This document shows positions 8,045 through 58,224 of a DNA stretch of 64,000 nucleotides, in pieces. Every line of letters starts with the position of its first letter. Position 1 is the stretch's first letter. The position numbers and the translations under genes are program-made. The notes beneath the pieces are model-generated. The model searched no databases and was not told the DNA's origin. It worked only from the letters and a program-made list of their open reading frames with translations. This DNA is from Octopus sinensis. Lineage: Eukaryota. The stretch lies in assembly GCF_006345805.1 (NCBI RefSeq), contig NC_043002.1, forward strand, positions 18,228,001 through 18,292,000. The letters run 5' to 3'.

Positions 8045-8630
<586 letters not shown>

Positions 8631-9860: not shown

Positions 9861-10500
9861 GCTCGGTCATGTTTGCTCTGGTTGATTCTGTGAGAGCGGA
9901 CAGCAGCCTGTTGTTAAGGGTCTCTCAGGGTCCCTTTCCGTACAATATAGCTCTGATAATTGGTTGTTAATTATGGTAGAAGACATTCGACACCCATGTC
10001 AAAGTCCTAGTTGTCCCCAGCAGAATAGTATTTTAGGCTTCTTCTGCTCTCATGTCAATTCCAGTTTCTCTTACATATTTCTCTAGCATATTTGTTAGTG
10101 TACCGAGTGCCCCTACAACTACTAAGATGATAGACACACTACTCATAGTCCACATTCTTGCATTTACGTCTTTTAATAGTTTGTACTTTCCCATCTTTTC
10201 GAGTTCTTTGTCACATATGCGTGCATCCCCAAGTATTGCAATATCCATAATCTTGATTCCCTTTTTTCCTTCATCTACCACACCAATGTCTGGTCTTTGA
10301 GCATCGTTTAGGGAGCCACATTGGATTCTAAAATCTCGCAGTATTTTATATTCCTTGTTCTCGATGGCTTTTTCTGGTTTATATTCGCATCGTTTCCGTG
10401 CTGTCCACAGTGAACGAGCTTAGCCACGTTATTGTGCCTCCTTTTGTAGTGTTTTTTCGGCCAGCTTGCTACACTCACTCATAATATGCGTGATCGCTTA
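9861..10500 (-). mobile_element. RLE non-LTR retrotransposon 3' fragment (endonuclease and 3' UTR)
   Basis: Minus strand reads KHYKRRHNNVAK, QRPDIGVVD..IMDIAILGD..KELEKMGKYKLL..MW..VVVGALG; PD-(D/E)xK-type motifs. Confidence 0.8.
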
Positions 10501-11485: not shown

Positions 11486-11516
11486 ATTATTATTATTATG
11501 AATATTATTATTATTA

Positions 11517-11568
<52 letters not shown>

Positions 11569-11608
11569 TATTATTATTATTATTATTATTGTTATTATTA
11601 TTATTATA

Positions 11609-11643
<35 letters not shown>

Positions 11644-11663
11644 TACTATTATTATTATTATTA

Positions 11664-11709
<46 letters not shown>

Positions 11710-12211
11710 TATTATTATTATTATTGTTATTATTATTATAATAATTATTATTATTATTATTATTACTATTATTATTATTATTATATTATTATTATTATTA
11801 TTACTATTATTATTATTATTATTGTTATTATTACTATCATTATTATTATTATTGTTATTATTATTATAATAATTATTATTATTATTATTATTTGTACATT
11901 CTTGGGTAGTGCACGTTTTAAATTTGGAATGACACAGACAAATTTAACATGGCCTCTGCGTAATGGTGACATGCAAATACGTGAAGCGTTCCATTCAGGC
12001 AGCGAGCTAGAGAAGCCGTTACCACGGGGAACAAAATATTTAGCGGCAGTTCTTCCGGTTTTAGGTTTTGAATTTTTTTCGAGGCCAATAAAATAAAGTA
12101 GCACTTGATAGCTGGATCCATGTAATCGACAAGCCCCTTTCCCCCGAAAATTCCAAGCCTACAGTAGTAGTTTTATTTTTGTTATTATTATTATTTTTAT
12201 TATTATTATTA

Positions 12212-12267: not shown

Positions 12268-13924
12268 TAGTTTTATTTTTATAGCGTGCTTTCACTTCAC
12301 TACCGAGCGCAGCTCTGTGTGCCTTGGGTATGTTCTGTGATTTGTTGTGATGCTCTGATGGTTATTGTATGGAAAGTGTTCTGCGTAGGATGTGTGCAGT
12401 GCCTAGTAGTGCAATTTTCTGTATGTTATATGTGTTTGTAAGTCCTGGTGTTTTTGTTATGTATTTATCTGAATATTTTTTTATCATGCCTAATGCACCT
12501 ACTATGATAGGAATTGTTTCTGTTTTCAGGTTCCACATTCTAGTTATCTCTATTTCCAGGTCTTTGTATTTTGAGAGTTTCTCCATTTCTTTTAGAGACA
12601 CGTTGTCATCTGCCGGTATTGATACATCAATTAGAAAGCATTTTTTTTCTTCATGATCTCTAACAACTATATCTGGTCTGTTGGCCTTAATTTCTCTATC
12701 TGTGTGTATCGGCATATCCCAGAGTATGGTTGCTTTCTCGTTTTCTGTGACCTTTTCTGGTGTGTGCCTATACCATCTTTTTTCTGTTGTTATTCCATAA
12801 TGTTGGCATAGCTTCCAATGTATGTAGGTTCCAACTCTGTCATGTCTGTGAATATATTCCTTCTTAGCCAGGACTGAGCAGCTAGAGATAATATGATTTA
12901 TTGTTTCTTGTCCATCTCCACATATTCTGCAGTTACTTGTAATATTTCTTTTTATTACATGTTTTTGGTAATTTCTGGTGGGGAGACTTTGGTCTTGTGC
13001 TGCAATTAAAAATCCCTCTGTTCCTGCTTTGAGTCCTGAGCTTCTCAACCATTGCTGGGATTTTTCTTTGTCTATTTCTTTTGCGTTTAGTTTAGTGCAG
13101 TATTTACCATGAAGGGGCTTTTCTTGCCATCGTTTTATCATGGCTCGTTGCTGTTCTATTTTTAGTTTGGATTTCATTTGTTTTATAGCTTTTGTTGTTT
13201 CTTCATCATCTCTTCTTCTTCTTTGTGTTTATTAGGTGGTATGATTTCTTGTTTGTATTTGTCAGCTTCCTTAAATACTGAGAACAGTTTTTTGTTTTGC
13301 TCGTGTTTTGCTGCTATCTGGATCAGTTTTCCTTCCTTCTGAAGTAGGTATTTTTGCAGTCCTATGGTGGTTATTTTATAGTAGTTTTCCAGCTGTATAA
13401 GGCCTCTACCACCTTCTATACGTTGTATATATAGTCTTTCTATGTCAGATTTTGGGTGATGCATCCTAGATCCTGTCAGTATTTTTCTTGTTTTCCTATC
13501 TATTTTGGACAGTTCATTCGTGTCCAGTTACGGATATTGTAGCTGTAACTTATAACTGGGACAGCTAAAGTGTTGATACCTATTATCTTGTTTTTAGCAT
13601 TGAGCTCTGTTTTTAGTATTGATCTAACTCGTCTATATATTCTTTTTTTATTTTCTCTTTCATTTGTGTGTTTTGTGTCTTATCTAGTTCATGGATTCCT
13701 AAGTATTTGTAAGTTTGGCTTTGGTCTAATTCTTTTATTTCATTGGTTTTATCTAGTGTGATGTTGTTACTCTTAACTAGTTTTCCTCTTTTCATGGTTA
13801 CTTTGGCGCATTTTTCTAATCCAAATTTCATATCTATTTCTTTGGTAAATCCATGAACTGTCTTTAATAGTGTTTCCAGCTGTTTGTCATTTGCAGCGTA
13901 TAGTTTTAGGTCATCCTTATATAA

Positions 13925-13925
<1 letters not shown>
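12265..13925 (-). mobile_element. 5'-truncated R4/Dong-type RLE non-LTR retrotransposon in a (TAA)n tract
   Basis: RT motifs LYKDDLKLY, FGLEKC, YKYLG, HPKSDIERLY..GGRGL; CCHC knuckle CRICG..ETINHIISSC; RHD; endonuclease NRPDIVV..LIDVSIP..KYKDL. About 3 frameshifts and a ~95-bp 3' UTR. ATT tracts on both sides. Confidence 0.9.
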
Positions 13926-14001
<76 letters not shown>

Positions 14002-14015
14002 CATCATCATCATCA

Positions 14016-14074
<59 letters not shown>

Positions 14075-14129
14075 GTTGTTGTTGTTATTATTATTATTAC
14101 TATTATTGTTATTATTATTATTATTATTA

Positions 14130-14280
14130 CGGCAGCGGTATTTCGCCAATCACTATGTTCTGAGTTCAAATCTCGCTGAGGTCGACAAAATAAGTACCAG
14201 TTCAACACTGGGGTCGATGTAATCGACTCATCCTCTCCCCGAAAATTGCTGCTCTTGTGGAAAAATTTTAAACCATTATT
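14130..14280 (+). mobile_element. SINE family C fragment, internally deleted, tail C2
   Basis: GCGGTATTTCG..GTTCTGAGTTCAAAT..GAGGTCGAC/AAAATAAGTACCAGTT..GGGGTCGATGTAATCGAC. Confidence 0.75.
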
Positions 14281-15253
14281 ATTAGTGTCGTTGTTGTTGT
14301 TATTGTTGTTGCTGTTGTTGTTGTTGATTTTAAGTTTAAAGGAGTGAATGCATTGAGACAACTGTGAAGAATCCTCTCGCTGCTAACTTATTTCCTGCAA
14401 ACTTCATTTAAAATTGATTCTTAACCTTGTTTGCTTCATGTCCCCTTTCAAATATATGTGAAAAAGGTTCCCTAATATATTTCATTGCATTTTATCACTC
14501 AATAATTATAGAAATGTAATGAAATATTATGCAAGTCAAAGCCTTACTGTTATCTACGTATGTGTACGCAAAAATTAGTTACTTTCATCCAAGTTTCTTT
14601 TTAACTAACGAAGATAGGCCGAACTCCTTACTGAAAATCAAAAACATATATACTACGCATTTAATGTACTTTTATATTTAAATAGTTATCCGGTGCCTAA
14701 TATAGGCTTCCGATATTTAGTTCATTGTTTTTTGTAGCTTCTTGTTTGTTTGTATGCTTTTTTGTTTCTGTTTTTTTGTTTTTTGTTTTTTGGTTTTTTG
14801 CCAATGGCTCAAATCTTCTTGTACAATCATTTATAATCTATTAATTATCAAATACATGAATCTGAAACAGTTCTAGGCCAAATATAAAGGGAAAATAATA
14901 CTTCCTTTGTATCTATGGGTGGAAGTCTATTAATTTAGTTTAGTGTATTTATGAATGCAAGTCTATTAATCTAGTGTTTTAATCTAGTTTTACAAATAGG
15001 TTTATTTGAGCAGAATGTGCAGTAATAAGATATCAGATTTATGTCAAGCAGTGGTATTTTCAATTCATCAAAGATTTTTATACTTGCTCATCATGTTATC
15101 GTCTTTCAGTTCCTGTAGATGAGAATAATTCTCCAGATTTGTATCTAACATCCATTTACTGGCATTATTTTTTTATTATTTGTATATTCGGAAGCCGCTG
15201 AAAATTTTGTCTTACATCGCCATTAATGTCACATGTAATTCTACTGATAAAAA

Positions 15254-16347: not shown

Positions 16348-17344
16348 TGTGGTTTTCTATCACTTCTTGTGATTTTAGTGGCATTTGCCATTTTGTTGAT
16401 TTTTCTTGATTCTGAAGTATCTCTAAGAGGAATTAGCGATATTATATTGCTTTGATCAGAGCCTTTCATACTTATTAATAACTTCATTACAGCTCGTAAG
16501 ACGAGTTACACCAAGTGTAGATGTTTTCTACATTTCACCATTAATTTGAAATTTACTAATTCCCCTCCTTTCCTGCCACCTCTTTCTCTCCGTTACTTTT
16601 TCCTTCTCTGTCTTTCTCTCTTTCTTTCTTTCTCTTTCTTTTTATCTATCTATCTATCTCTCCCTGCTTGGCTATTTTGTTTTCAATCAACTCATTAATT
16701 GTAGATCGATTTCAAAATTTATTTTACAAACACTGAAAGTTGGATGGTTTGTTTGTAAATGATCAATCATTCTTGATAGCTTTAGTCCTTCATTTGTGAA
16801 TTTTCCTTTTCATTTTTCTTTTTTTTTTCTCATGATAAATATATTGGTAACATCTCACTATTAATGGATGGAATACTTCTCTATTTTAAATATTTACTTG
16901 AATATCGATGACACTTTCCTGCTTTCACTTCTTTTTTATGAACCTAACTATAATAGCGATATTTGTATAAAACCCTTTTATCTTAACGTAGGATTAAAAT
17001 AAAAGACATTCCAAGCTTCGGTTGATTGTTGCATGAAATAAAATGAAGGATGCTTCTCTGATAGTGGTTTACATATAATAGTGATAAAAATTAATTAAAA
17101 GCAAAACTTAAGAATTGACACTTAGAAAATAGAAGTCTTTTTTTTTCTGATGACTTCGAATTTAACAAAAGTACAAGGAAATGACAACAAAACAACGAGC
17201 TTGTTGAGTCATTAGCGTGTCGGAAAACTACTTAGCGGCGTTTCTTTACATACTGTTTGCGTCCTGAGTTTGAATAACTATACAATTAGTACCAGCCAAG
17301 TACTGAGTTCGATGTGATCGACCAAGCTTCGGATCTTTACCTTT

Positions 17345-17570
17345 TGACCGACAGATTTAAAAAATGATTTTATGTAACTAAACACTTTCAAACTTCGTAT
17401 ACTGGTAGAATGTGTCACATAAAACATCTTTTACTCTTGGCGTTGTTGAGAAAATTCTGTATTTTGGAAGTTATTTTTTGTTAAAGTTGTCGTATTTCGG
17501 TAATTTCAACCAATCAATGACGTGTATTCAGCTGAATAAAATTACGGCTGTTGTTTGTCAACAATAACTT
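17345..17570 (+). mobile_element. Solo diverged copy of the long-TIR arm seen at 33608 and 38327
   Basis: Shares TTTCAAACTTCGTAT..GAATGT.TCACA and GTTAAAGTTGTCGT.TTT.GGTAATTTCAACCAATCAA with 33650-33785. Confidence 0.7.
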
Positions 17571-20900: not shown

Positions 20901-22716
20901 TTTTCATTGTCTTTGACCAATGTAAGACAGTCAAGGAATCAAACTGACAAGCTATATTTACTGAATCTCGTTTTTTCTCGTTTACTAGTTGCAATTACGA
21001 CGTAACGATTTGTCAGAAGAAATTCTAAGCCTTTTTATTCAGCCGACAGAACAGTCTTTCTTTCTCTTATTTCATTTTATTTTATTTTCGATTAAGCAAA
21101 GAAAAATTATCTTTACAAGGAACTAACATTGCTTGTTGAATTTCCCTTGATACATTATAGAGAATAAATGTGTTCTGTTGTTTAGCTAGCTGATGGTGCT
21201 TTATATCACTCTATCAACATTTCTTGTTATTTTTAATCCCCTGTGCGGATACTCTTCAGAATCAAGAGAACTGTTATCTCTGAGTAATGTAATTCCCAAT
21301 ACACTATACATAGATTAATTTATTGAGGTGTCCTATTTAAGAACGGAGAGTATTTCACAACAGGATGTAAAAAAACGCTGCTCAATCTAAAATTAAAATT
21401 AAGATTAATTTTGCCTACTACAATAGTATCTGTTTACAAAGTTTGTCGCATATTTCTCAATAAAGTTGGAAACATGGCCAATATACACACGAGCTGTCTC
21501 AGTCAGTACAGATGATTGGTAATATCCATGCTATTTTATGTTACTGATAATTTTTCTTTCTCATATCATTTTATTTTTCAAATTTTAGAATGATGATGTT
21601 TGGCTTGAATACATAATTTTGGATGGAAATAGAAAAAGAAATAAAAGAAGCCAGTTTAGTTTCGATAAGAACATAGAATTGAAGATATGACTCGCAACCA
21701 GTCAAAATTTTAAATGGCTTTCAACACTACTCGTTTTGCAAGCTATGTTAATGGTATTATTTTCGGTAAGAATAAAATCGTATAGCGGAGATTGTACAAG
21801 ACATTAGTTCCCAACTGCTATACATTTGCCGGTGAATCATATATCTCTGTCTTGTCTGTTAATAGTTGTTAATAGTTTCATAACAAAATATTATTTGAAA
21901 AAACAATTATCAGTAGTATATGAACAGCAAACAATTTCTTGCGATGAATATTTCATCGTAAACAGATCTCGTGTCGATTTCGAAAGTTAGAATTCTAGTT
22001 GTTCAACCAACAGAAGTGCCTACACGTTGAATGATTATCTAAGTGACTGGATATTCCACAGACTAGCACTGGAACGCAAGCTCAAATATAAGAAGCGTTG
22101 TTACAATCGTGTTGTAGCGTGCGATAAATTTCGCTCCTGGTATAACATACATATTCCCTTACTCATCCAATAATCTTTCTACAGTACCAAAAGCTGATGG
22201 GATGTGCTTCTCCTCCCTAACTACTGAGAGAGATAGAAACCAGGACATTATTTCGCAGCCTCATCCCGTTACTATGGTTCAGAAGATGTGTGTTCCATTT
22301 GGCCATACTAACTTGTAAGAATTTGGAGATGACAGGAGAGATCTTATATATTTCAACGGCCTTGAGTATCCAATTATGTGAGATACTATCAAACGTTTTC
22401 CAGTAGTCTAATTATTATTATTATTATTGTTGTTGGTGGTGGTGGTGGTGGTGGTGTTGTTATATTGCCTTTGCACAGCTACGGTGTCAGCTGCTCACTA
22501 CTAGTGAACTAAGGTAACTTCCCTTATTTTTCGAGCACCATCTGGAGTTAATTTTTTATTACCTATAAAAGGCTACACACAAAAAGCTTATCGACGAATA
22601 CAACATATAAAGACAATATAAAACGAGACATAGCATAAATCATCTGGACTATTCGAGCAGTTCCATTTTTATCATCATCATCATCATCATCATCATCATT
22701 ATTATTATTATTATTA

Positions 22717-22758
<42 letters not shown>

Positions 22759-22762
22759 TATT

Positions 22763-22803
<41 letters not shown>

Positions 22804-22839
22804 TTATTATTATTTTATTATTATTATTATTATTATTAT

Positions 22840-22897
<58 letters not shown>

Positions 22898-23589: not shown

Positions 23590-24064
23590 AAAACTTGATA
23601 AAACATTAGACCATCTCGTCTCATGATGTCCTGTGCTGACATCAAATGAATGCAAAAATCTCCACAATAGAGTAGGTCAGTGTTTACACTGGAAAATATG
23701 TAAACACTACAAAATCAGCATTCCTGCTTACTGACATCATCCTGACCAGCCGTTGAAGGTAAAAATGTCACTATCCTCTGGTCAACACCGACAGAACAAT
23801 TCTGGCTATTCGACCAGACATAGTCATTAAAGACGGAGAAGAAAATTCTTGTAGAATAATAGATGTAAGTCTTCCCACTGATAAAAATATATCTGTAAAG
23901 AAATTTGACAAACTAAGTAAATATAAGGACCTGGAAATTGAAGTACAAAATATGTGGCATCTTGAAGCGATAACTGTTCTTGCTATTGCGGAAGCCTTAG
24001 GTATGATAAGAAAGGGATGTCAGAAACATCTAGATAAGATCCCAAGAGAACCATGTCTCACAGA
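23590..24064 (+). mobile_element. Degenerate RLE non-LTR retrotransposon C-terminal fragment
   Basis: LHNRVGQCLHWKICKHY and IRPDIVIKD..IIDVSLPTDKN..KLSKYKDLEIEVQNMW..ALGMI. Confidence 0.85.
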
Positions 24065-24070
24065 AATCCA

Positions 24071-24650
24071 ATAGATTGTGCTGCCATGTTCTGCCTACAT
24101 CTTTCGAAAAAAACTATCAACTTAAATGTACAGGGGTTGGACAAAATAATAGAAACACCTTAAAATGTCAAACAAAATTATTCTAATATGGGGTAGGACC
24201 GCCTTTGGCAGTAATTACAGCTTGAATTCTACCAGGTATGGATTCGTACAAAGTTTGAATTTTTTCAGCTAAAACAGTCCCCAGTTCTTGTAGTGATGAT
24301 AATGGAGAATATCGATTTCTTACTTGTTTTTCTAAAATACACCCTAAATGTTCAATAATATTGAGATCCAGGGACAGTTGTGGTCAGATAAGATGTTCAA
24401 CTTCACTAGAATGTTACACGTGCTATTCAGTAACAACTTTAACTGTGTAAATTTGTGCATTATCATCCTGGAAGATTGCGTTTCCCCGGAAACAGTTCCG
24501 CAAACATAGGATGAATTTGATCAGATAAAAGGCTTAAATAGTCTTGATTATTAATTCTGCCATGAAGGGAAACCATTGGGCCGGCGCATTTCTAAGATAT
24601 AGACCCCCAGATCATCACATATCCTCCTCCATGTTTAACAGTTGGAAGAA
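24071..24650 (-). mobile_element. Tc1-like DNA transposon 3' fragment with TIR
   Basis: TA + CAGGGGTTGGACAAAATAATAGAAACACC terminus. Minus strand reads PQLSLDLNIIEHL and IQTLYESIPGRIQAVITAKGGPTPY*. Confidence 0.85.
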
Positions 24651-26810: not shown

Positions 26811-27039
26811 AACCATCATAATCATCATCATCATTGTCATCATCTTCATCATCATCGATCAAATTAGCTGTCAATGCGGAACTGGCATCGATGTTATTGA
26901 TTTGTCTCCTACTCTCCGTGTCTTCCTGACACCTAGAGCATAGAAACTCACTGTATACATTGATAGGTCATTAAAATACACACACCAGATTTCACAAAAT
27001 CAAATGTAGTAATGTGGAAAAATGTTATTTACCTATATG

Positions 27040-28620
27040 GTAATTGTTGTCGGAGGGACAGTGCTCTTCTCAATACGTGTGACGTACAACCTAAGGCAAT
27101 CTTTCGTGTTTCTTGCACAGATAGTAAGCCAGGTATAATTTTCGTATAATTTTCAATTCCTTTTTTCATCATTCCTAGTGCTCCTACAATCACCCATATT
27201 GTAACCGCCTTTAGATGCCATATTTTTTTCGATTTCAATGAGAAACTCTTTATATTTTCTGAGCTTGCCAAATTCTTTTGCCGAGATATTATGAACACAA
27301 TATTCATGTCGATTTCTGAACAGACTTCGTTATTCTGGTCTTTTGCAACAATATCCGGTTTATCCAGCTTTGATGATTCTGTCTGTATGCACTACAAAGT
27401 CCCATAGAATCAATACATTTTCTCCCTCAGTTACAGCTTAATGAGACAATCAATGCCGCCATTCAATTGCACAAGGTCTGATTCAGCCCAGATTTTCAGA
27501 TGTGCAGAAATTGGGAGGAACAGGTTACCAGCTTCACTCGGAAATGTGAGAAGCTGTCCCTGACAGGTTAAGCAGTGTTTAATCCTTGCACTGCCTCCGT
27601 CCATAACTTACTGCCTGATAGCCATGTCTTGTCCTAAACCTCTCTGACCAGTTTAGAGCGTCTGCTCTTCTCTTAGTTTTCGTGTTCACATTGTCCATCA
27701 AGCTAGAAGATGAGCTTGCTATGTCATGGCTGCTGATGCATAGACACGCTAAGGCAGTACAAATTGTAGATGTTTCAGGACATCGACAGGTATCCTCTTG
27801 TAAGGCACGCTTTTCTGCATGTCATTCTGGGTGAATAATGACCAAGATTAGTTGCCTGACTCATGGAGTGATGCCCTGCACTCTCTACAAAGCGGAAAAT
27901 TTAGCTGATGGAAGATTAACTTTAATAATATGTAAAGATCTAGAGGTGAGTAAGAGCGGTGCAGTTTTTGAGGTAAAGTTTACTCAGTAGTGCTTCGGAG
28001 AGAGAACTGCCGGTTAAGGATAAACACTTTACAGGCACCAGAAGTACTGCAAAGCGGGACTGTGCGAGATGCGAGCAAAGCGACGAAACCAAACAGCATG
28101 TAATTGTGCAATGTCTAAACACTGCTTGCTGAAGTTACGTCGAATAGCTTATGTCAAATGTTGGACAGATCTGCCAATCAGCCGAGTTCATCGCGAAAAT
28201 CGCCTCTCCACCCTTCCTTAACAAAGCTGGTTAGGTAATGTCCTTATGTCTGGATCTATGGCTGAAGAGGTTGTATGGTAAACCGGCTGAAAGGATTGAT
28301 AGCAGGCAACTTTCTCATCAGGCAAGCCCAAATCTACATTTTCAACTTAGCCTTGGAAAGGAAATGGAGGGTCGAAAATGAAGTATTCTCATCAAGCAAA
28401 TTTCTCAAAAGAGAAATGACTGCTGCGAAAATAGTTTAGGTAAATGAAGCTACTCTAAGCATGTACCTGGGGATTGGATAAATACCTCCACGTACATGAT
28501 AGGGCTCGTGCTGTTTGTGGTTACGTTGAACTTGGATCTTCGGGTTTCTTGCTTGACCCTAAATGAAGGCTCTCTAATATGAAGACTTCATTATATAGAT
28601 GTTCAGCAACGTGTATACCA
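27040..28620 (-). mobile_element. Heavily degenerate RLE non-LTR retrotransposon (3' half)
   Basis: ORF 27029-27307 has IWHLKAVTIWVIVGALGMMKK..SHVLRRALS. Upstream minus frames give KPDIVAKD and VTEGENVLILWDF. The high-coordinate boundary is uncertain. Confidence 0.6.
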
Positions 28621-32657: not shown

Positions 32658-34450
32658 GCGGTTTTGAATTAATCTTTGTATGATATGCTACGTGTGAGCT
32701 GTCATCAAATGTTTTTAGTGTCTGCGCCAGATTGAGACAAAAAAAACTTATCTTAGACAAACGTTGTCAAAACGTTCAGCTCTATGTCAAAAATATTTCC
32801 GATATACAAACAATAATACATCTTATTTCATAAATGTTTGTTGTTACTGTTATTGATGCCGTCATCGTCATATTATCATTTCTTAAATATTTTCTTTAAT
32901 ATCTTTTTTTTTTTTTCAATTTTGACTATGTATTTTTCTTTTCTATTTATTTATTTTTTCTTGTTTTTTTTTATGTTTAACGTTTCATGTTTTGTTTGTA
33001 TGAGTTTTTGTTTCTTCAATTATTTATCTATTTACTTTTGAAATGTGTTTACCTTCCGAAAAATAAAATGGACGAATAGATACAATGTATTGATACCTGA
33101 TAAAAGTATACGGTCTTAAATTTAAAGCAGAGATAAAAATCGAATAAATCCACTTCACTGGTGCTTAGCTTTTCTCTCCTTCTAACATCCCTGGAGGAGA
33201 AAGAAGCAAAGCTCATCAAAACGAGAAATGACCTCAACTCTTAACGAGTCGTAACCAAAAACCGGAAGTCTTTTCTCGACTATCAATACCATCGGCTACT
33301 ATACCATCCAAGGAAGGTGCTAAATATCAACGTAGAAATAAATACAATGCTTCTTTTAAGTATTTTGTTTCTCATTATTGTTCTTGTTCGTGTTGTTGCT
33401 GTTCTTCTCGCTGAAGTGTTGTCTTTTATTTTCTGGAAGAAAGACAGACGTAGATGAATGTCGCTTCACATTTACGAGTTTTGTAGTTCTCTTTTTCATT
33501 TTTTTCGGGTTTTTTTATATTCTTTTAATGTCTTACACATGGCTCTTTTCAAGACTCCTGATATCGACGAGATGAAGTAGGAAGCTATATTTAGACATAA
33601 GTCCTTGGCTTACAGATTTTTTAATTAATTTTGTTTTAAATAAACAGTTTCAAACTTCGTATGCTAACGGAATGTCTCACACAGAACACGGTTTACTTTG
33701 AACATTTTTGACAAAATTTGGTATTTTAGAAGTTACTTCGTGTTAAAGTTGTCGTGTTTGGGTAATTTCAACCAATCAACAACGTATATTCGGTTGAAGA
33801 AAGCTACAGCTGTTTGCGATAGTAATCGAAGAGGAACAACCTCCGGTTCATCTCTACTAAATGTCACCACTCTCTTCTATTTAGTTTATTGTTTAAAGCC
33901 TGTGTTGCATATTACACGCTTTTGGGGGGGGGGTCTCGCGTCAGAGTAACCAGTAAACATCGAAGTATCAACACCAAGAAGGTAGAAATATCATTTACAT
34001 ATATTTATTCGTTTGCCCGACATCGGTGTTTTATCCACGCATAAAGCGCACCGGTGTTTAAAAGACCTATAGAGCTACGAGTCTGCAGCGAGGTTTTTTG
34101 TTGTTGACGTATATGTACGTATATGTAGTTTCAAAGTGCCTTATTTTACAACTACGAGATGTATTGTTATTGCCATGAGTTCATCTTATTATAATCAACA
34201 ACAAACAAAATTAGATTAAAAATAACATTATCAAAACATGAATGTAACACAAAACAAATAGCGACATATACACCTGTAAATAATAACTGTAGTGGCAATG
34301 ACAATTTCGCTCGCTGGTTACTAGTTGACAATGTAGATGGGAGGGAAAGAGTAAGGAATGCACAGTACTGACTAGAAAGGATAAAGGATAAAGGTGGCAT
34401 CGTCTTCGTTCAACATACCAATAGAACAGAGTAGTGACATTTATTAGAGA

Positions 34451-34845
34451 CTAGCAGTATCGCCCGGCGTTGCTCGGGTTTGTAAGGGAAATAACTATAT
34501 AAGCATTTTTAGAGAGTTATAGCCAAAAAATAGGAAAAAAATGCATTAAAAATGGAAAAAAAATTAAGGTAAATTTCTTTTTAAATCGTTGACACATCGT
34601 AGATATTTTTAGAGAGTTACTTCCCTTATATAATAGCGAAAAAATGCATTAAAATGGAAAAATATGATGGTAAATTTTTTAAATCGTAGACTCATCGTAG
34701 ACGCGCGCTAATACCCAGAAGGGCTCGATATGACTCACGACTATAAGATACCCGGTTTTGGTTACACTGCACCGCAAAATGTGGGAGTAGTTAGGAATCT
34801 AAATCGTAGGAGACAGACACACAACTTCACTCTTATATATAAAGA
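34451..34845 (-). mobile_element. Small non-autonomous Helitron (395 bp) forming the 3' end of the composite
   Basis: 5' TCTTTATATATAAG, 3' hairpin + CTAG. An independent homolog lies at 54950-55346. Confidence 0.9.
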
Positions 34846-34952
34846 TATAAGCCACGTAGTTATATACATATACTTTGTTATATACGCATTCTTAAAAGAA
34901 AATGTTATTTTGAATACAACATTTATAAAGAATAAAATATTTTTGGTTTTTC

Positions 34953-35181
34953 TTAACCCTTTCGTTACATAATTCTGACCAAAATACACCCCTTATGTGT
35001 TTCAATTAATTTCTAACGTAATCATAAATTTAGTCTGGTTTCATTAAACAACTATAACTTTTTTAGTTATCAATATATTAATGTGATTTTTGGAAGATAA
35101 TTAATGAAATGTCCTCAACCAATTCTATACTATAATTTTTGTCACAAAGTGACTCTAATTGCAGGTAAATTCAACAATATA
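34953..35181 (-). mobile_element. piggyBac-like terminus (3' end of the element)
   Basis: TTAA + CCCTTTCGTTAC, the canonical piggyBac end pattern, lying downstream of the minus-strand transposase relic. No partner terminus found. Confidence 0.65.
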
Positions 35182-37703
35182 TAAAATTATTAAAATTTTG
35201 TTCAAACATCGCTATAGAAAATGGTTATTAGCTAATATTCAATTGGGTATACAACAAAATTTTATAATAGAATTTGTTATTCTGGGTAACTTTCTGTAAA
35301 ATTATTAAAATTTTGTTCAAACATCGCTATAGAAAATGGGTTATTAGCTAATATTCATTGGGTATACAACAAAATTTTACAATATAATTTGTTATTCTGG
35401 GTAACTTTCTGTAAAATTATTAAAATTTTGTTCAAACATCGCTATAGAAAATGGGTTATTAGCTAATATTCAATTGGGTATACAACAAAATTTTACAATA
35501 GAATTTGTTTTCTGGGTAACTTTCTGTAAAATTATTAAAATTTTGTTCAAACATCGCTATAGAAAATGGGTTATTAGCTAATATTCAATTGGGTATACAA
35601 CAAAATTTTACAATAGAATTTGTTATTCTGGGTAACTTTCTGTAAAATTATTAAAATTTTGTTCAAACATCGCTATAGAAAATGGGTTATTAGCTAATAT
35701 TCAATTGGGTATACAGCAAAATTTTACAATAGAATTCTGGGTAACTTTCTGTAAAATTATTAAAATTTTGTTCAAACATCGCTATAGAAAATGGGTTATT
35801 AGCTAATATTCAATTGGGTATACAACAAAATTTTACAATAGAATTTGTTATTCTGGGTAACTTTCTGTAAAATTATTAAAATTTTGTTCAAACATCGCTA
35901 TAGAAAATGGGTTATTAGCTAATATTCAATTGGGTATACAACAAAATTTTACAATAGAATTTGTTATTCTGGGTAACTTTCTGTAAAATTATTAAAATTT
36001 TGTTCAAACATCGCTATAGAAAATGGGTTATTAGCTAATATTCAATTGGGTATACAACAAAGTTTTACAATAGAATTTGTTATTCTGGGTAACTTTCTGT
36101 AAAATTATTAAAATTTTGTTCAAACATCGCTATAGAAAATGGTTTATTAGCTAATATTCAACTGGGTATACAACAAAATTTTACAATAGAATTTGTTATT
36201 CTGGGTAACTTTCTGTAAAATTATTAAAATTTTGTTCAAACATCGCTATAGAAAATGGGTTATTAGCTAATATTCAATTGGGTATACAACAAAATTTTAC
36301 AATAGAATTTGTTATTCTGGGTAACTTTCTGTAAAATTATTAAAATTTTGTTCAAACATCGCTATAGAAAATGGGTATTAGCTAATATTCAATTGGGTAT
36401 ACAACAAAATTTTACAATAGAATTTGTATTCTGGGTAACTTTCTGTAAAATTATTAAAATTTTGTTCAAACATCGCTATAGAAAATGGTTTATTAGCTAA
36501 TATTCAACTGGGTATACAACAAAATTTTACAATAGAATTTGTTATTCTGGGTAACTTTCTGTAAAATTATTAAAATTTTGTTCAAACATCGCTATAGAAA
36601 ATGGGTTATTAGCTAATATTCAATTGGGTATACAACAAAATTTTACAATAGAATTCTGGTAACTTTCTGTAAAATTATTAAAATTTTGTTCAAACATCGC
36701 TATAGAAAATGGGTTATTAGCTAATATTCAATTGGGTATACAACAAAATTTTACAATAGAATTTGTTATTCTGGGTAACTTTCTGTAAAATTATTAAAAT
36801 TTTGTTCAAACATCGCTATAGAAAATGGGTTATTAGCTAATATTCAATTGGGTATACAACAAAATTTTACAATAGAATTTGTTATTCTGGGTAACTTTCT
36901 GTAAAATTATTAAAATTTTGTTCAAACATCGCTATAGAAAGTGGTTTATTAGCTAATATTCAACTGGGTATACAACAAAATTTTACAATAGAATTTGTTA
37001 TTCTGGGTAACTTTCTGTAAAATTATTAAAATTTTGTTCAAACATCGCTATAGAAAATGGGTTATTAGCTAATATTCAATTGGGTATACAACAAAATTTT
37101 ACAATAGAATTCTGGGTAACTTTCTGTAAAATTATTAAAATTTTGTTCAAACATCGCTATAGAAAATGGGTTATTAGCTAATATTCAATTGGGTATACAA
37201 CAAAATTTTACAATAGAATTTGTTATCTGGGTAACTTTCTGTAAAATTATTAAAATTTTGTTCAAACATCGCTATAGAAAATGGGTTATTAGCTAATATT
37301 CAATTGGGTATACAACAAAATTTTACAATAGAATTTGTTATTCTGGGTAACTTTCTGTAAAATTATTAAAATTTTGTTCAAACATCGCTATAGAAAATGG
37401 GTTATTAGCTAATATTCAATTGGGTATACAACAAGATTTTACAATAGAATTTGTTATTCTGGGTAACTTCTGTAAAATTATTAAAATTTTGTTCAAACAT
37501 CGCTATAGAAAATGGGTTATTAGCTAATATTCAATTGGGTATACAACAAAATTTTACAATAGAATTTGTTATTCTGGGTAACTTTCTGTAAAATTATTAA
37601 AATTTTGTTCAAACATCGCTATAGAAAATGGGTTATTAGCTAATATTCAATTGGTATACAACAAAATTTTACGATAGAATTTGTTATTCTGGGTAACTTT
37701 CTG
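35182..37703. repeat. Tandem satellite, 22 units of 116 bp
   Basis: CATCGCTATAG recurs at 35207, 35322, 35437, 35552, 35668, 35777, 35893, 36009, 36125, 36241, 36357, 36471, 36587, 36695, 36811, 36927, 37043, 37152, 37267, 37383, 37498 and 37614. Confidence 0.97.
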
Positions 37704-38008
37704 ATACCCATAATAATATTTATGGCAAAATAGGCCTTAATTTCATTTAAGGTTGTGGGAAATAACAAACTATCCTTTCTTTCGTTTTCTTTACGTTTAG
37801 CGTAACGTTTCGTTTCTGCCGTAATGATGTCAAATGGGCTCATTCGAAAAAGTAAATAGAAATAGTCTAAGGCGTTACTCTTCTGGGAAAGTCTGTGGCT
37901 TGGTGCAGTTTCTTCAGAAAAATCACCGAAAGAAACAGTTTTTAAATTTTCACTCCATTCAGGTACCAATTCGTTTTCTTTATCGCTGTCGGATTCACTG
38001 TTTTCACT
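37679..38008 (-). pseudogene. piggyBac transposase N-terminal fragment
   Basis: SENSESDSDKENELVPEW...ALDYFYLLF..DIITAETKRYA..FPTTLNEIKAYFAINIIMGIRKLPRITN: acidic leader followed by the conserved IVxETNRYA / TTxxEIxxF..MGxxxLP pattern of piggyBac transposases. Confidence 0.85.
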
Positions 38009-39311
38009 TTAATAGCTGCCAACTTGCAAAGACAAAGGAGGAGAAGGGTGATAGCGTCAGTGAAACAATTCGCTCCCTTTGTGTGTGTGTGCGTTTGCGT
38101 GTGGTGTAAACCACATTAAGAAAAACATTTGACATACACACCAGAATGTGAGTTTTCTGTAAATTTTGCTTAATTGGAGTTTAAATTTTAAAAACTGGAC
38201 CTGGCATGACGCAATGCATTCTACTCTTAAAAATGCTAGGTAAATTGTAATTGAAGAAATCCTATATTGTAGATTTCTATAACTCCCAAAGGGAGGCAGA
38301 TAAAATCTGCCTTTTATAATAAGAGATGACCCGGAAGTTGTTCCTCTTCGATTACTATTGCAAACAGCAGTAGCTTTTTTCAACAGAATACACGTCGTTG
38401 ATTGGTTCAAATTACCCAAACACGACAACTTTAACACGAAATAACTTTTAAAATACCAAATTTTGTCAAAACTGTTCGAAGTAAACTGTGTTCTCTGTGA
38501 CACATTCCACCAGTATACGCAATTTTAAAATGTTTAGTTTTAAAAAATTAATTAAAACATATGTGGGCCAAACTGAACAGATCCAAAATGATCGCTATAA
38601 ACCCAAAAATATAAGCGGCCCACTTTTCCCACTTTTCTATTGACCAAATTTCGTTTAGAAGTATTTTATTGACCTGTGGCTATGGAAAGAATATACCCAA
38701 AATCCTGCTTAAAGGGACTGGGACTCACACACACAGAGGGACTTAAAGGAGCTGCTTAAAGAGACTGTGTCGTTATTACAAAGTAAACTTAACCAACTGC
38801 TGTTGGTCATTGCACCCATTTGTCACACTACGAAAGGATAGGCAGCTAACCAGACAGACAGATTTGCTAATGGCTGAGTTGATAAGATTCTGTGCTGCCC
38901 ACTGAATAAACAACGTCAACTCTAAACAGGTTATGTCTGGCCAATGTCGTTATGCTGTATCCATGCACAATATATTAAACTCGTATCACTTCAATCCTCT
39001 AACGTTCAAATAAATACGTAGGAGGTATTATATCCATATAAATGTAGTCTCCCTTTGAAATCAATGGCTTTGATTATGCTACTTGGCATCTAGTGAACTT
39101 GGAATGAAGATCAAACAACAACGTTTCGTCTATGTTCTGATTCGTCTAGTTCTCCTCCAACCTACCGAACTATACCGACAGAAAGTTGAACTAGATTGCA
39201 AATTGTGCAACTCAGTTTCAGTGAGCGTTGATGGGACATCAGGTAAGTTGAATTTCGGCGCGATTACAGGCTGTTTTTGAGATTTTTGTTTCTTTTTTTT
39301 ACTTTTCCCAT

Positions 39312-52804: not shown

Positions 52805-52842
52805 TATTATTATCGTCATTATTATTATTGTTATTATTATTA

Positions 52843-52902
<60 letters not shown>

Positions 52903-52913
52903 TATTATTATCA

Positions 52914-52947
<34 letters not shown>

Positions 52948-52952
52948 CATTG

Positions 52953-53007
<55 letters not shown>

Positions 53008-53010
<3 letters not shown>

Positions 53011-54949: not shown

Positions 54950-55346
54950 TCTTTATATATAAAAGTGAGTTGTGTGCTGTCTGTCTCCTACGATTTAGAT
55001 TCCTAACTACTCCCACATTTTGCGGTGCAGTTGAACAAAAACCGGGTATCTTATAGTCGTGATTCATATCGAGCCCTTCTGGGTATTAGCGCGCGTCTAC
55101 GATGAGTCTACGATTTAAAAAAAAATTTGCCATCAATTTTTCCCATTTTTAATGCATTTTTGGCATACATAAGAGAAGTAACTCTCTAAAAATTTATTAT
55201 TAAATCTCAGAACGTAAAACGCTACAGTAACACCCCCCCCCTTTGTGGTTAGCCATATTGAGATGGCTATTATATTTTACATCTCTAAAAATGCTTATAT
55301 AGTTATTTCCCTTACAAACCCGAGCAACGCCGGGCGATACTGCTAG
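54950..55346 (+). mobile_element. Small non-autonomous Helitron (397 bp)
   Basis: A | TCTTTATATATAAAAG ... CCCGAGCAACGCCGGG CGATACTG CTAG | T; no TSD. Confidence 0.9.
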
Positions 55347-57730: not shown

Positions 57731-58004
57731 CTCAGAGCTCAAATTCTGCTGTGGTCGACTTTGACATTCATCCTTTCGAAGTCAATAAAAGGAAGTGCTA
57801 GTTTTGTACTGGGGTCAGTGTAAAAGTTGATCCCGTGCCAAAATTTGAAACAATCATGAGGTAAAAAATGGTGCATACAGTAACTCATTTGTGAAGTTTC
57901 TTTCGTTGATATTTACCTTGACAGTTTATCGATTTACACTCACCTCCGACATTGCTAGCCTTGTGCCTAGAGTAGAAAGATTATTATTATTATTATTATT
58001 ATTA

Positions 58005-58063
<59 letters not shown>

Positions 58064-58146
58064 GTTATTGTTGTTGTTGTTGTTATTGTTATTATTATTA
58101 TTTATTATTATTGTTGTTGTTGTTGTTATTGTTGTTATTATTATTA

Positions 58147-58182
<36 letters not shown>

Positions 58183-58224
58183 TATTATTATTGTTATTAT
58201 TATTATACAATTATTATTATTAGT

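What the first reader, a model, noticed from the sequence alone, without database searches (positions are those of the whole stretch)
34451..38326. A 3.9-kb composite Helitron carrying a piggyBac relic and a satellite array, with exact junction evidence
Seen: the host right TIR is cut between A and T. Its outer part ends ...CCGGGTCA at 38327 (minus) and its inner part resumes TCTCTAATAAATGTCACTACTCTGTTCTAT at 34450, matching the intact left arm (33851-33880) at 27/30 nt. The intervening DNA starts TCTCTTATTATAAAAGG (14/20 identical to the small Helitron start, followed by the palindrome AGGCAGAT-AAA-ATCTGCCT), ends in hairpin+CTAG, and has no TSD. The 5' module has no CTRR terminator of its own at 34846, so the terminator is that of an intact 395-bp Helitron. 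Established: Helitrons insert at A|T, run TC...CTRR, and are proposed to capture DNA by bypassing a terminator. Inference: an end-bypass capture product in which a rolling-circle element transports another transposon class and a satellite seed.
Basis: partly seen in the sequence, partly recalled or inferred. Interest (0 to 1): 0.8.

Follow-up and report, generated by a model that had tools for sequence, protein, structure and literature searches.

The report
Composite octopus Helitron carrying piggyBac relic
A 3.9-kb rolling-circle transposon (Helitron) in an octopus-type genome is built from a borrowed start and a complete small Helitron as its stop, carries a dead piggyBac transposon with part of it amplified 22 times, and a sister copy elsewhere shows that the frame moves as one unit; this is a clear example of a known process, not a new kind.

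Summary
Window 34451-38326 (minus strand) splits the right arm of a long-inverted-repeat transposon exactly between A and T. It starts TC, ends hairpin+CTAG and has no target duplication. The rejoined arm aligns without a gap to the intact left arm.

Its last 395 bp are a complete small Helitron, which also occurs alone at 54950-55346. The cargo is a piggyBac relic that lacks its left ~410 bp, plus 22 copies of a 116-bp unit. That unit is an internal piece of a short piggyBac derivative, spanning its deletion junction.

The 5' module is not the piggyBac left end. Octopus sinensis holds a second copy of the same frame: the 245-bp 5' module, then the piggyBac tail, spacer and small Helitron, at 97-99% identity. 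It lies at a different A|T site, and the orthologous O. bimaculoides site is precisely empty. That copy has a different middle, with no piggyBac ORF piece and no array.

Mobility as a unit and transport of a piggyBac relic are therefore supported. Transport of the array is not shown. TTAA on both sides of the relic suggests piggyBac entered by its own insertion rather than by read-through. This is a compound Helitron of the type already described by Tempel and others: a new member of a known kind, of moderate interest.

The parts
33593..33881 (+). Left arm of the host element, a non-autonomous long-TIR DNA transposon. It holds the intact paralogous 'empty site' ...GGTTCA|TCTCTACTAAATG at 33850/33851. 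The outer end is approximate.
33882..34419 (.). Inner, non-repeated part of the host element (538 bp).
34420..34450 (-). Inner 31 nt of the host right arm, cut off from the rest by the Helitron. On the minus strand it starts with the T of the A|T target.
34451..34845 (-). Complete small non-autonomous Helitron (395 bp), TCTTTATATATAAGAG...CTGCTAG. It serves as the 3' terminal sequence and terminator of the composite. The hairpin CCCGAGC-AAC-GCCGGG lies at 34463-34478. The element has two ~100-bp internal sub-repeats.
   Evidence: It is 99% identical to L001 14800-15195.
34846..34952 (-). 107-bp spacer. It is the DNA that flanked the piggyBac right end and into which the small Helitron had inserted; on the minus strand it ends ...GGCTTATA|TC.
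   Evidence: It is unique in the window and 96% identical to L001 14691-14798.
34953..34956 (.). TTAA target duplication at the piggyBac right end.
   Evidence: The L001 composite has TTCA here.
34957..35181 (-). piggyBac 3' region with the right TIR (CCCTTTCGTTAC on the + strand, 34957-34968).
   Evidence: 92.5% identical to L001 6325-6680 and 84-91% to other copies. TIR identity is shown.
35182..37703 (-). Tandem array of 22 x 116 bp. It is an amplified internal segment of the short piggyBac derivative and spans its internal-deletion junction.
   Evidence: TRF and the monomer table with recurring variant blocks. A single unit sits at L001 6325-6431 at 97% identity.
37704..38009 (-). 5'-truncated piggyBac transposase region (open piece 37643-38008, DDE_Tnp_1_7 positions 2-58). 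About 410 bp of the left end, including the left TIR, are missing.
   Evidence: It is 92% identical to L001 6010-6431. The true left end is absent.
38010..38013 (.). TTAA directly abutting the truncated piggyBac. It is the probable left target duplication, retained after a deletion flush with it.
Evidence: Read directly from the sequence.
38014..38081 (-). 68 bp specific to this copy, lying between the (CA)n tract and the TTAA. It is probably the other half of the DNA into which piggyBac inserted.
   Evidence: No homology in the L001 copy and none elsewhere in the held sequence.
38082..38326 (-). Conserved 245-bp 5' module, the left terminal sequence. It reads A|TCTCTTATTATAAAAGG with the palindrome AGGCAGAT-TTT-ATCTGCCT and ends in a (CA)n tract.
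   Evidence: 97% identical to L001 12472-12716. See for the terminus comparison and the fold.
38327..38584 (-). Outer part of the host right arm. On the minus strand it ends with the A of the A|T target.
54950..55346 (+). Solo copy of the small Helitron (397 bp), AATAAA|TC...CTAG|TATTTTC.

Best explanation
Window 34451-38326 (minus strand) is a compound, non-autonomous canonical Helitron that arrived as one piece at an A|T dinucleotide in the right arm of an older long-TIR transposon.

How it moves. Its mobile frame has three parts: a 245-bp left terminal module (TC...), a short stretch of once-flanking DNA (68 bp + TTAA + 107 bp), and a complete 395-bp small Helitron. The small Helitron's hairpin+CTAG acts as the terminator. 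A RepHel transposase supplied in trans by an autonomous Helitron would nick at A|TC of the 5' module, unwind 5'->3', and run through the internal small-Helitron start. It would stop at the small Helitron's hairpin/CTAG and integrate the strand between A and T (inferred from Helraiser biochemistry).

How the frame arose. The best fit is the Tempel-type end-bypass or compound route. A 5' end without a working terminator of its own uses the next same-family Helitron downstream.

How the cargo arose. The cargo is passive. A ~1.1-kb short piggyBac derivative integrated at a TTAA between the two Helitron ends. It then lost its left ~410 bp flush with the TTAA, which immobilised it. A 116-bp internal segment of it was amplified to 22 tandem copies, by slippage or unequal exchange.

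What is shown: the anatomy, the A|T junctions, the piggyBac origin of the array unit, a second copy of the frame, and an orthologous empty site.

What is inferred: the trans-acting RepHel, the order of events, and when the array expanded.
For: - Precise A|TC...CTAG|T insertion, with a gap-free reconstituted host arm.
- The 3' 395 bp are a complete Helitron that also exists solo with its own A|T flanks.
- The 28-nt hairpin+CTAG end is identical in 4 copies, against 0 expected by chance.
- The 5' terminus is related to the small Helitron start (14/20; 9 other such 20-mers in 128,000).
- Second copy: O. sinensis L001 12472-15195 has the same 5' module (97%, 245 bp). It also has the same piggyBac tail + spacer + small Helitron (97.9% over 628 bp), between different flanks, GCTAA|...|TAACATT.
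- O. bimaculoides has the exact empty site GCTAA|TAACATT, with no duplication or deletion.
- The 5' module is not the piggyBac left end.
- piggyBac identity rests on Pfam, a complete short relative with 12-bp TIRs and TTAA, and that relative's own empty TTAA site.
- The array unit equals a single-copy segment of that relative.
- TTAA lies on both sides of the relic.
- Published mechanism: the left terminal sequence is essential, the hairpin ~11 nt from the end is the terminator, and bypass transduces downstream DNA (PMC4778049). A neighbouring Helitron used as terminator gives compound Helitrons such as HelibatN539 (PMC4224331).
Against: - Only two copies of the frame were seen. The second lacks the piggyBac ORF piece and the array, so the full 3.9-kb module order has been seen only once.
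- No progenitor locus and no piggyBac-free precursor were found.
- No autonomous RepHel partner was looked at.
- The 3' hairpin is not thermodynamically remarkable on its own.
- The left TTAA could be chance, roughly 1-3% in this base composition.
- The L001 copy can be explained either by bypass of an internal terminator or by nested insertion followed by recombination between two 5' modules. It therefore does not prove bypass.
- Array length rests on the assembly alone.
Confidence: 0.82

Rival explanations
1. The array grew at this locus. The Helitron delivered a piggyBac relic with one or a few 116-bp units, and the 22-copy array expanded after insertion. On this reading the Helitron did not transport a satellite array.
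For: - All other copies of the unit seen are single: L001 4964-5056, 6325-6431, 9061-9158 and 11637-11729.
- The sister composite has no array.
- Monomers are 96% alike.
- Variant pairs recur 4 monomers apart: deletion 15-21 followed by 53G/72A, in monomers 5-6 and 9-10. This is the signature of recent block duplication.
Against: - Nothing dates the expansion relative to the transposition.
- The sister copy has lost that whole region, so it says nothing about the ancestral state.
Confidence: 0.5
2. Stepwise assembly at this locus. The small Helitron inserted first into the host arm, and the remaining 3.5 kb arrived later at its 5' junction, either as a second Helitron using the same A|T or through other insertions.
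For: - The small Helitron is complete, and its 5' junction (A|TC) is itself an A|T site.
- Helitrons of this family do nest in one another (L001 13933-14569).
Against: - The upstream 3.5 kb has no CTRR or hairpin at 34846-34900.
- The same spacer + piggyBac tail precede the small Helitron at an unrelated locus, and the same 5' module bounds that insertion. The O. bimaculoides site there is cleanly empty.
- piggyBac has no TTAA junction with host DNA.
Confidence: 0.04
3. Not transposition at all. The 3.9 kb is a patch copied into a double-strand break in the host arm (filler DNA or ectopic conversion), or it is an assembly chimera.
For: - A 5-nt TCTCT microhomology lies at the junction.
- The array could mislead an assembler.
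Against: - Both ends coincide to the base with Helitron termini.
- The same termini bound an independent insertion with a verified empty site and no microhomology.
- The host arm has lost or gained no base.
Confidence: 0.03
4. True read-through capture of piggyBac. The piggyBac relic, already truncated, simply lay in the genomic interval between an upstream Helitron 5' end and the downstream small Helitron. It was transduced at the first compound transposition, rather than inserting into an already mobile composite.
For: - The structure fits the Tempel-type model (PMC4224331; PMC4778049).
- The piggyBac tail is shared by both composites, so it was present early.
Against: - This differs from the best explanation only in timing.
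- The two TTAAs show that piggyBac reached that interval by its own integration.
- Whether that happened before or after the first Helitron move cannot be told from two copies.
Confidence: 0.4

Closest known systems
Compound or chimeric Helitrons formed by end bypass with a neighbouring Helitron as terminator (Feschotte & Wessler 2001; Tempel et al. 2007; HelibatN539 in bats, Thomas et al. 2014, PMC4224331)
   Same: The 5' end comes from one element and the 3' end from another, complete, same-family element in the same orientation, with the intervening DNA carried along. The ends are TC...CTAG and the target is A|T.
   Different: The intervening DNA here holds a relic of another DNA transposon rather than a host gene fragment. 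The progenitor locus has not been seen. The same 245-bp 5' module is paired with two independently inserted small Helitrons.
Helraiser / Helibat read-through transduction (Grabundzija et al. 2016, PMC4778049)
   Same: The ends are TC/CTAG, a palindrome lies ~11-12 nt upstream of the 3' end, and the target is A|T. An internal complete terminator inside the L001 copy is compatible with bypass.
   Different: There is no experimental evidence here and no transposase was identified. The L001 structure also has a non-bypass explanation.
Tandem-repeat-bearing rolling-circle elements of molluscs and flies (oyster Helentron-borne satDNA-like arrays, PMC7492417; Drosophila DINE-1/DINE-TR1, PMC4067079)
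   Same: A non-autonomous rolling-circle element in a mollusc with an internal tandem array, and a possible route for dispersing satellite seeds.
   Different: Those are Helentrons, with a T-T target, subterminal inverted repeats, and arrays that are a regular family feature. Here the element is a canonical Helitron. The array derives from a piggyBac passenger and has been seen in one copy only.
Short internally deleted (MITE-like) piggyBac elements
   Same: The passenger matches a 1.07-kb element with 12-bp TIRs and a TTAA duplication that was recently mobile in the O. sinensis lineage.
   Different: The passenger has lost its left TIR and 410 bp, so it can no longer move as a piggyBac. It also carries a 22-fold internal amplification.

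Membership tests
Canonical Helitron (non-autonomous) | 5' terminus TC and 3' terminus CTRR | tested here: met
   The ends read TCTCTTATT...CTGCTAG in the window and in L001. The small Helitrons read TCT(T/A)TATATA...CTGCTAG.
Canonical Helitron (non-autonomous) | Insertion between A and T without target-site duplication, shown by an empty site | tested here: met
   Paralogous test: the rejoined right arm aligns to the left arm without a gap. Orthologous test for the sister copy: O. bimaculoides reads GCTAA|TAACATT. All five 5' flanks end in A and all four 3' flanks start with T.
Canonical Helitron (non-autonomous) | G+C-rich hairpin about 10-12 nt upstream of the 3' end | tested here: met
   CCCG(A)GC-AAC-GCCGGG ends 12 nt before the terminus and is invariant in 4 copies. 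Its folding energy alone is not significant (z = -0.8).
Canonical Helitron (non-autonomous) | A RepHel-encoding autonomous partner with matching termini in the same genome | not testable with these tools
   No eukaryotic genome search was available. The literature lists 8 recently active Helitron families in O. vulgaris (PMC13282606).
Canonical Helitron (non-autonomous) | Several copies at unrelated loci | tested here: met
   There are two composites (window and L001) and four small Helitron units in ~100 kb of O. vulgaris/sinensis-type DNA. None occur in 30.7 kb of O. bimaculoides.
Helentron / Helitron2 | Insertion between T and T, with subterminal or asymmetric terminal inverted repeats | tested here: not met
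   The flanks are A and T at every junction. No terminal inverted repeat of the insert appeared among the longest pairs.
End-bypass / compound Helitron (Tempel type) | A complete downstream Helitron, with its own A|TC start, forms the 3' end; the upstream part has no terminator of its own | tested here: met
   The junction is ...GGCTTATA|TCTTTATATATAAG at 34846/34845. There is no CTRR or G+C hairpin in 34846-34900.
End-bypass / compound Helitron (Tempel type) | A progenitor locus with the two parent Helitrons flanking the captured DNA | not testable with these tools
   The precursor junction is absent from the window and from L001, L003 and L004. No genome-wide search was possible.
piggyBac (passenger) | Transposase of the DDE_Tnp_1_7 family | tested here: met
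   Pfam PF13843, E = 1.3e-7, 31.7 bits against a cut-off of 22.4, N-terminal 57 profile positions only. Identity to O. sinensis piggyBac-derived proteins is 73-91%.
piggyBac (passenger) | Both TIRs flanked by a TTAA duplication | tested here: not met
   The right TIR + TTAA are present (34953-34968). The left TIR and ~410 bp are absent, and a TTAA abuts the truncation. The intact relative, L001 5597-6676, has both. This is a relic, not a functional member.
Satellite DNA | Long head-to-tail array of a fixed monomer | tested here: met
   22 x 116 bp, 96% matches.
Satellite DNA | The same monomer forms arrays at many loci or makes up a sizeable genome fraction | not testable with these tools
   Only single units were seen elsewhere. 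It is safer to call this a local tandem array.

The most novel reading that the evidence does not exclude
The 245-bp 5' module may be an 'orphan' Helitron left end with no terminator of its own. On this reading it habitually borrows the hairpin/CTAG of whichever abundant small Helitron lies downstream. That would repeatedly package whatever sits in between, and so act as a shuttle for dead DNA transposons and for tandem-array seeds across the octopus genome. Two packaged cargoes have been seen: a piggyBac relic in this window and a Mos1-type mariner relic in L001. The 116-bp piggyBac-junction repeat would then be a satellite family spread by rolling-circle transposition.
Probability: 0.2. Interest if true: 0.55.

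Novelty: new member of a known kind. Interest (0 to 1): 0.35.

Why it matters
This is a clean, base-resolved case in a cephalopod of one transposon class moving the dead remains of another, with a rigorously empty orthologous site for a sister copy. It matters in three ways.
- It shows how compound Helitrons form from a borrowed start and a neighbouring element's stop.
- It shows how a tandem array can be born from the deletion junction of a piggyBac derivative, at a place from which a Helitron could spread it.
- It is a practical warning for repeat annotation in octopus genomes. Automated consensus building would merge Helitron, piggyBac and 'satellite' into one chimeric family, and gene predictors already turn such relics into 'uncharacterized proteins' (LOC118764908).

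It does not change what is known about Helitron mechanism.

Tried and rejected
1. I first suspected that CCCTTTGGGAGTTATAG at ~38295 was a degenerate piggyBac left TIR, which would have made the Helitron 5' part only 31 bp. This was rejected. The family's true left end (L001 5601-6009) has no match in 38010-38326, and the 245-bp module recurs without any piggyBac next to it.

2. I tested whether the L001 copy keeps cryptic piggyBac homology just after its (CA)n tract (AAAGTGAAAC). The local alignment scored no better than shuffles, with 115 of 300 shuffles at least as good.

3. A protein-level search with the 148-aa ORF spanning host arm + 5' module, meant to catch other copies in read assemblies, gave no hits.

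4. Exact-pattern scans for the 5' end in metagenome contigs and for the 3' end in metagenome and viral contigs gave 0 hits.

5. I looked for a host gene within 10 kb of the insertion to fetch the window's own orthologous locus. Only transposon-like and low-complexity ORFs were found, so the empty-site test was done on the sister copy instead.

6. I searched for a piggyBac-free precursor junction (GGCAGCTA-TTAA-GAAAAACC) in all held sequence. None was found.

7. Extending the O. sinensis locus by 13.7 kb gave no further copies.


Full report
**Setting**

The window is AT-rich, microsatellite-rich eukaryotic DNA with no evident host gene near the finding. The only close protein relatives of the piggyBac piece are from Octopus sinensis (91% over the shared part) and from one read assembly. 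Transposon copies in O. sinensis chromosome CM016867.1 are 97-99% identical to those in the window. I therefore treat the window as coming from an octopus of the O. vulgaris/sinensis group. This is an inference; the species was not identified.

**Observation**

- A long inverted repeat has arms 33620-33855/38322-38557 (236 nt, 86%) continuing in 33851-33881/34420-34450 (31 nt, 90%).
- The right arm is therefore split by 3,876 bp (34451-38326).
- When the two flanks are joined, the right arm aligns to the left arm without any gap across the junction (...GGGTCA|TCTCTAAT... against ...GGTTCA|TCTCTACT...).
- On the minus strand the insert reads A|TCTCTTATTATAAAAGGCAGATTTTATCTGCC......CCCGAGCAACGCCGGGCGATACTGCTAG|T.
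- The 5' palindrome folds well (-7.6 kcal/mol, z = -2.5). The 3' hairpin is a 6-bp G+C stem with one bulge ending 12 nt from the end. It is weak by energy (z = -0.8) but identical in every copy found.

The window alone cannot exclude a 5-nt duplication. The sister copy settles this (see 'A second copy and a true empty site').

**The 3' module**

34451-34845 is a complete 395-bp small Helitron. Its start is TCTTTATATATAAGAG, preceded by A at 34846.
- A solo copy lies at 54950-55346 (+), between AATAAA| and |TATTTTC. It is 81.5% identical overall and 100% identical over the last 67 bp.
Only 9 other 20-mers of 128,000 in the window do as well. The two 5' ends are therefore related.

**The cargo**

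A stop-free 122-aa piece on the minus strand (37643-38008) matches Pfam DDE_Tnp_1_7 above threshold (E = 1.3e-7, profile positions 2-58). The array is 22 x 116 bp (35182-37703).

Fetching the O. sinensis locus of the best protein hit (L001) gave several copies of this piggyBac family.
- The key copy is L001 5597-6676. It is a 1.07-kb short derivative with perfect 12-bp TIRs (CCCTTTCGTTAC), TTAA on both sides, the same N-terminal ORF piece, one copy of the 116-bp unit and the same 3' region.
- It is absent from the orthologous TTAA of O. bimaculoides, so it moved recently.
- Full-length relatives read ...GIRKLPRITNYW..., whereas the short derivative and the window read ...GIRKLPRITNSIVKFCC.... 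The 116-bp unit therefore spans the internal-deletion junction of the short derivative.
- The 'satellite' is thus an amplified piece of the piggyBac passenger.
- Variant monomers recur as pairs four units apart: a 7-bp deletion followed by the 53G/72A variant, in monomers 5-6 and 9-10. This indicates growth by block duplication.

**The 5' module is not the piggyBac left end**

Homology to every piggyBac copy starts at window ~38010. The family's real left end and 5' leader (L001 5601-6009) have no match in 38010-38326; the only hit is the 16-nt TTAA+TIR at the other end, 34953-34968. The relic has therefore lost its left TIR and ~410 bp.

At the truncation the sequence reads GCTA-TTAA-AGTGAAAAC, and at the right end ...GAAAGGG-TTAA-GAAAAACC. 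A TTAA exactly at the truncation is expected if piggyBac integrated at a TTAA and later lost its left part flush with the duplication. By chance it would occur in roughly 1-3% of cases (my estimate from base composition).

**A second copy and a true empty site**

By chance L001 also contains, 0.5 kb from another piggyBac copy, a second element with the same frame.
- L001 12472-12716 matches the window's 38326-38082 (97%, 245 bp, ending in the (CA)n tract).
- L001 14570-15195 matches the window's 35073-34451 (97.9% over 628 bp). This covers the last ~115 bp of piggyBac with its TIR, TTCA in place of TTAA, the spacer and the small Helitron.
- Its flanks differ from the window's: ...TTCTAATGCTAA|TCTCTTATT.....CTGCTAG|TAACATTATAAATC.
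- It lies in the last intron of the mitochondrial ATP synthase beta gene.

I used the conceptual exon translation to find the O. bimaculoides orthologue and aligned the loci. O. bimaculoides reads ...TTTTAATGCTAA|TAACATTACAAATC. This is a base-perfect empty site, with no duplication and no deletion. The result does three things:
- It proves that elements bounded by this 5' module and this 3' end insert as Helitrons do.
- It fixes the element's first bases as TCTCTT, so the TCTCT identity in the window is coincidence or microhomology, not a duplication.
- It shows that the piggyBac tail travelled inside the Helitron to at least two loci.

**What the second copy does not show**

Its middle (12717-14569) is unrelated to the window's.
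- After the (CA)n tract there is no significant similarity.
- It contains microsatellites, a Mos1-type mariner relic (HTH_48, E = 1.5e-19) and another complete small Helitron (13933-14569, A|TC...CTAG|T).
- The CTAG of that small Helitron abuts the piggyBac sequence at an A|T that is intact in the window (ATATA|TTGATAA).

So L001 consists of [5' module + other cargo + small Helitron no. 2] followed by [piggyBac tail + spacer + small Helitron]. There are two routes to this structure, and the data cannot separate them:
- A transposition started at a nested element's 5' module, bypassed that element's own terminator and stopped at the next one.
- A nested insertion was followed by recombination between the two 245-bp modules.

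Either way the piggyBac ORF piece and the array are missing there. Transport of the array is therefore unproven.

**Mechanism**

Published work provides the basis.
- The left terminal sequence is essential.
- The hairpin ~11 nt from the CTAG end is the terminator.
- Bypass of the terminator transduces downstream DNA (Helraiser, PMC4778049).
- A neighbouring Helitron can serve as the new terminator, giving compound elements such as HelibatN539 (PMC4224331).

The window element has exactly that architecture: a same-family 5' end with no CTRR or hairpin of its own at 34846-34900, then intervening DNA, then a complete downstream Helitron.

My best account is as follows.
- The frame arose by compound or end-bypass transposition.
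- piggyBac entered the interval by its own TTAA integration, before or after the frame first moved.
- It lost its left end.
- Its 116-bp segment expanded.
- The whole element was mobilised in trans into the host arm.

The two copies differ by 2-3%. On the published octopus calibration (JC 0.09 ~ 25 My, PMC13282606) that is a few million years. This is consistent with absence from O. bimaculoides, which split 13-33 My ago. The dating is a rough inference.

**Comparison and novelty**

- Helitrons and piggyBac elements are already catalogued as recently active in O. vulgaris.
- Compound Helitrons and read-through capture are established.
- Rolling-circle elements carrying tandem arrays are well known in oysters and Drosophila, though those are Helentrons.
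- This element passes the tests for a canonical Helitron and fails those for a Helentron.
- The passenger is a piggyBac relic, not a functional member.

It is a new, well-documented member of a known kind. The less ordinary points are these:
- The same 245-bp module is paired twice with independently inserted small Helitrons.
- Relics of two other transposon superfamilies ride in the two copies.
- A tandem array was born from a piggyBac deletion junction.

**Limits**

- No eukaryotic genome-wide DNA search was available, so copy number, the progenitor locus, a piggyBac-free precursor, other array-bearing copies and the autonomous partner are all untested.
- Array length rests on the assembly alone.

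Noticed in passing
L001 5597-6676 (O. sinensis CM016867.1) versus L003 ~24235 (O. bimaculoides): A 1.07-kb short piggyBac derivative with perfect 12-bp TIRs and a TTAA duplication is absent from the orthologous single TTAA in O. bimaculoides. It is a recently mobile MITE-like piggyBac and the source type of the passenger and of the 116-bp unit.
   Followed up: yes
window 33593-38584 and 17328-17552; L001 15866-16609: The 'host' is a family of non-autonomous DNA transposons with ~260-bp TIRs starting GGATCTTTACCCTTTGA. The L001 copy is absent from O. bimaculoides and has a 9-bp duplication, AAGCTTCCA (Mutator- or Merlin-like size). The superfamily was not determined.
   Followed up: partly
L001 13400-13880 (inside the sister composite): A Mos1-type mariner N-terminal relic (Pfam HTH_48, E = 1.5e-19) rides inside the second composite Helitron. 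This is a second transposon superfamily carried by the same frame.
   Followed up: partly
L001 10001-11670 (O. sinensis LOC118764908, XP_036362000.1): The annotated 'uncharacterized protein' is a spliced model over a piggyBac relic. Its C-terminus, ...SSIVKFCCIPN, is translated from the 116-bp unit that forms the array in the window. It is probably an annotation artefact of a dead transposon.
   Followed up: partly
L001 12472-15195: The sister composite Helitron sits in the last intron of the mitochondrial ATP synthase beta gene of O. sinensis, on the antisense strand, together with a host-family TIR element. Both are absent in O. bimaculoides, and that intron is several kb longer in O. sinensis.
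   Followed up: partly
window 34505-34603 and 34605-34701: The small Helitron itself contains two ~100-bp internal sub-repeats (80% identical). The solo copy at 54950-55346 differs most in this region.
   Followed up: no
window 38322-38326 and 34446-34450: TCTCT is shared by the Helitron start and the host sequence just 3' of the insertion. It is absent at the L001 site. It may be chance or microhomology at integration.
   Followed up: partly
window 12365-13527 (-), 10036-10419 (-), 23763-24071 (+), 27032-27391 (-): These are related ORF fragments ending ...IVGALGMIKK..., one with a weak zf-RVT match (E = 2.5e-5, below cut-off). They are tails of a retroelement family present in several degraded copies in the window.
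   Followed up: no
whole window, e.g. 8065-8292, 11486-11892, 13925-14129, 22698-22897, 52805-53009, 57980-58222: There is an unusually high density of long (ATT)n, (TA)n, (GT)n and (TATG)n microsatellites. The conserved 5' module of the Helitron ends exactly at a (CA)n tract, where the two composites diverge.
   Followed up: no
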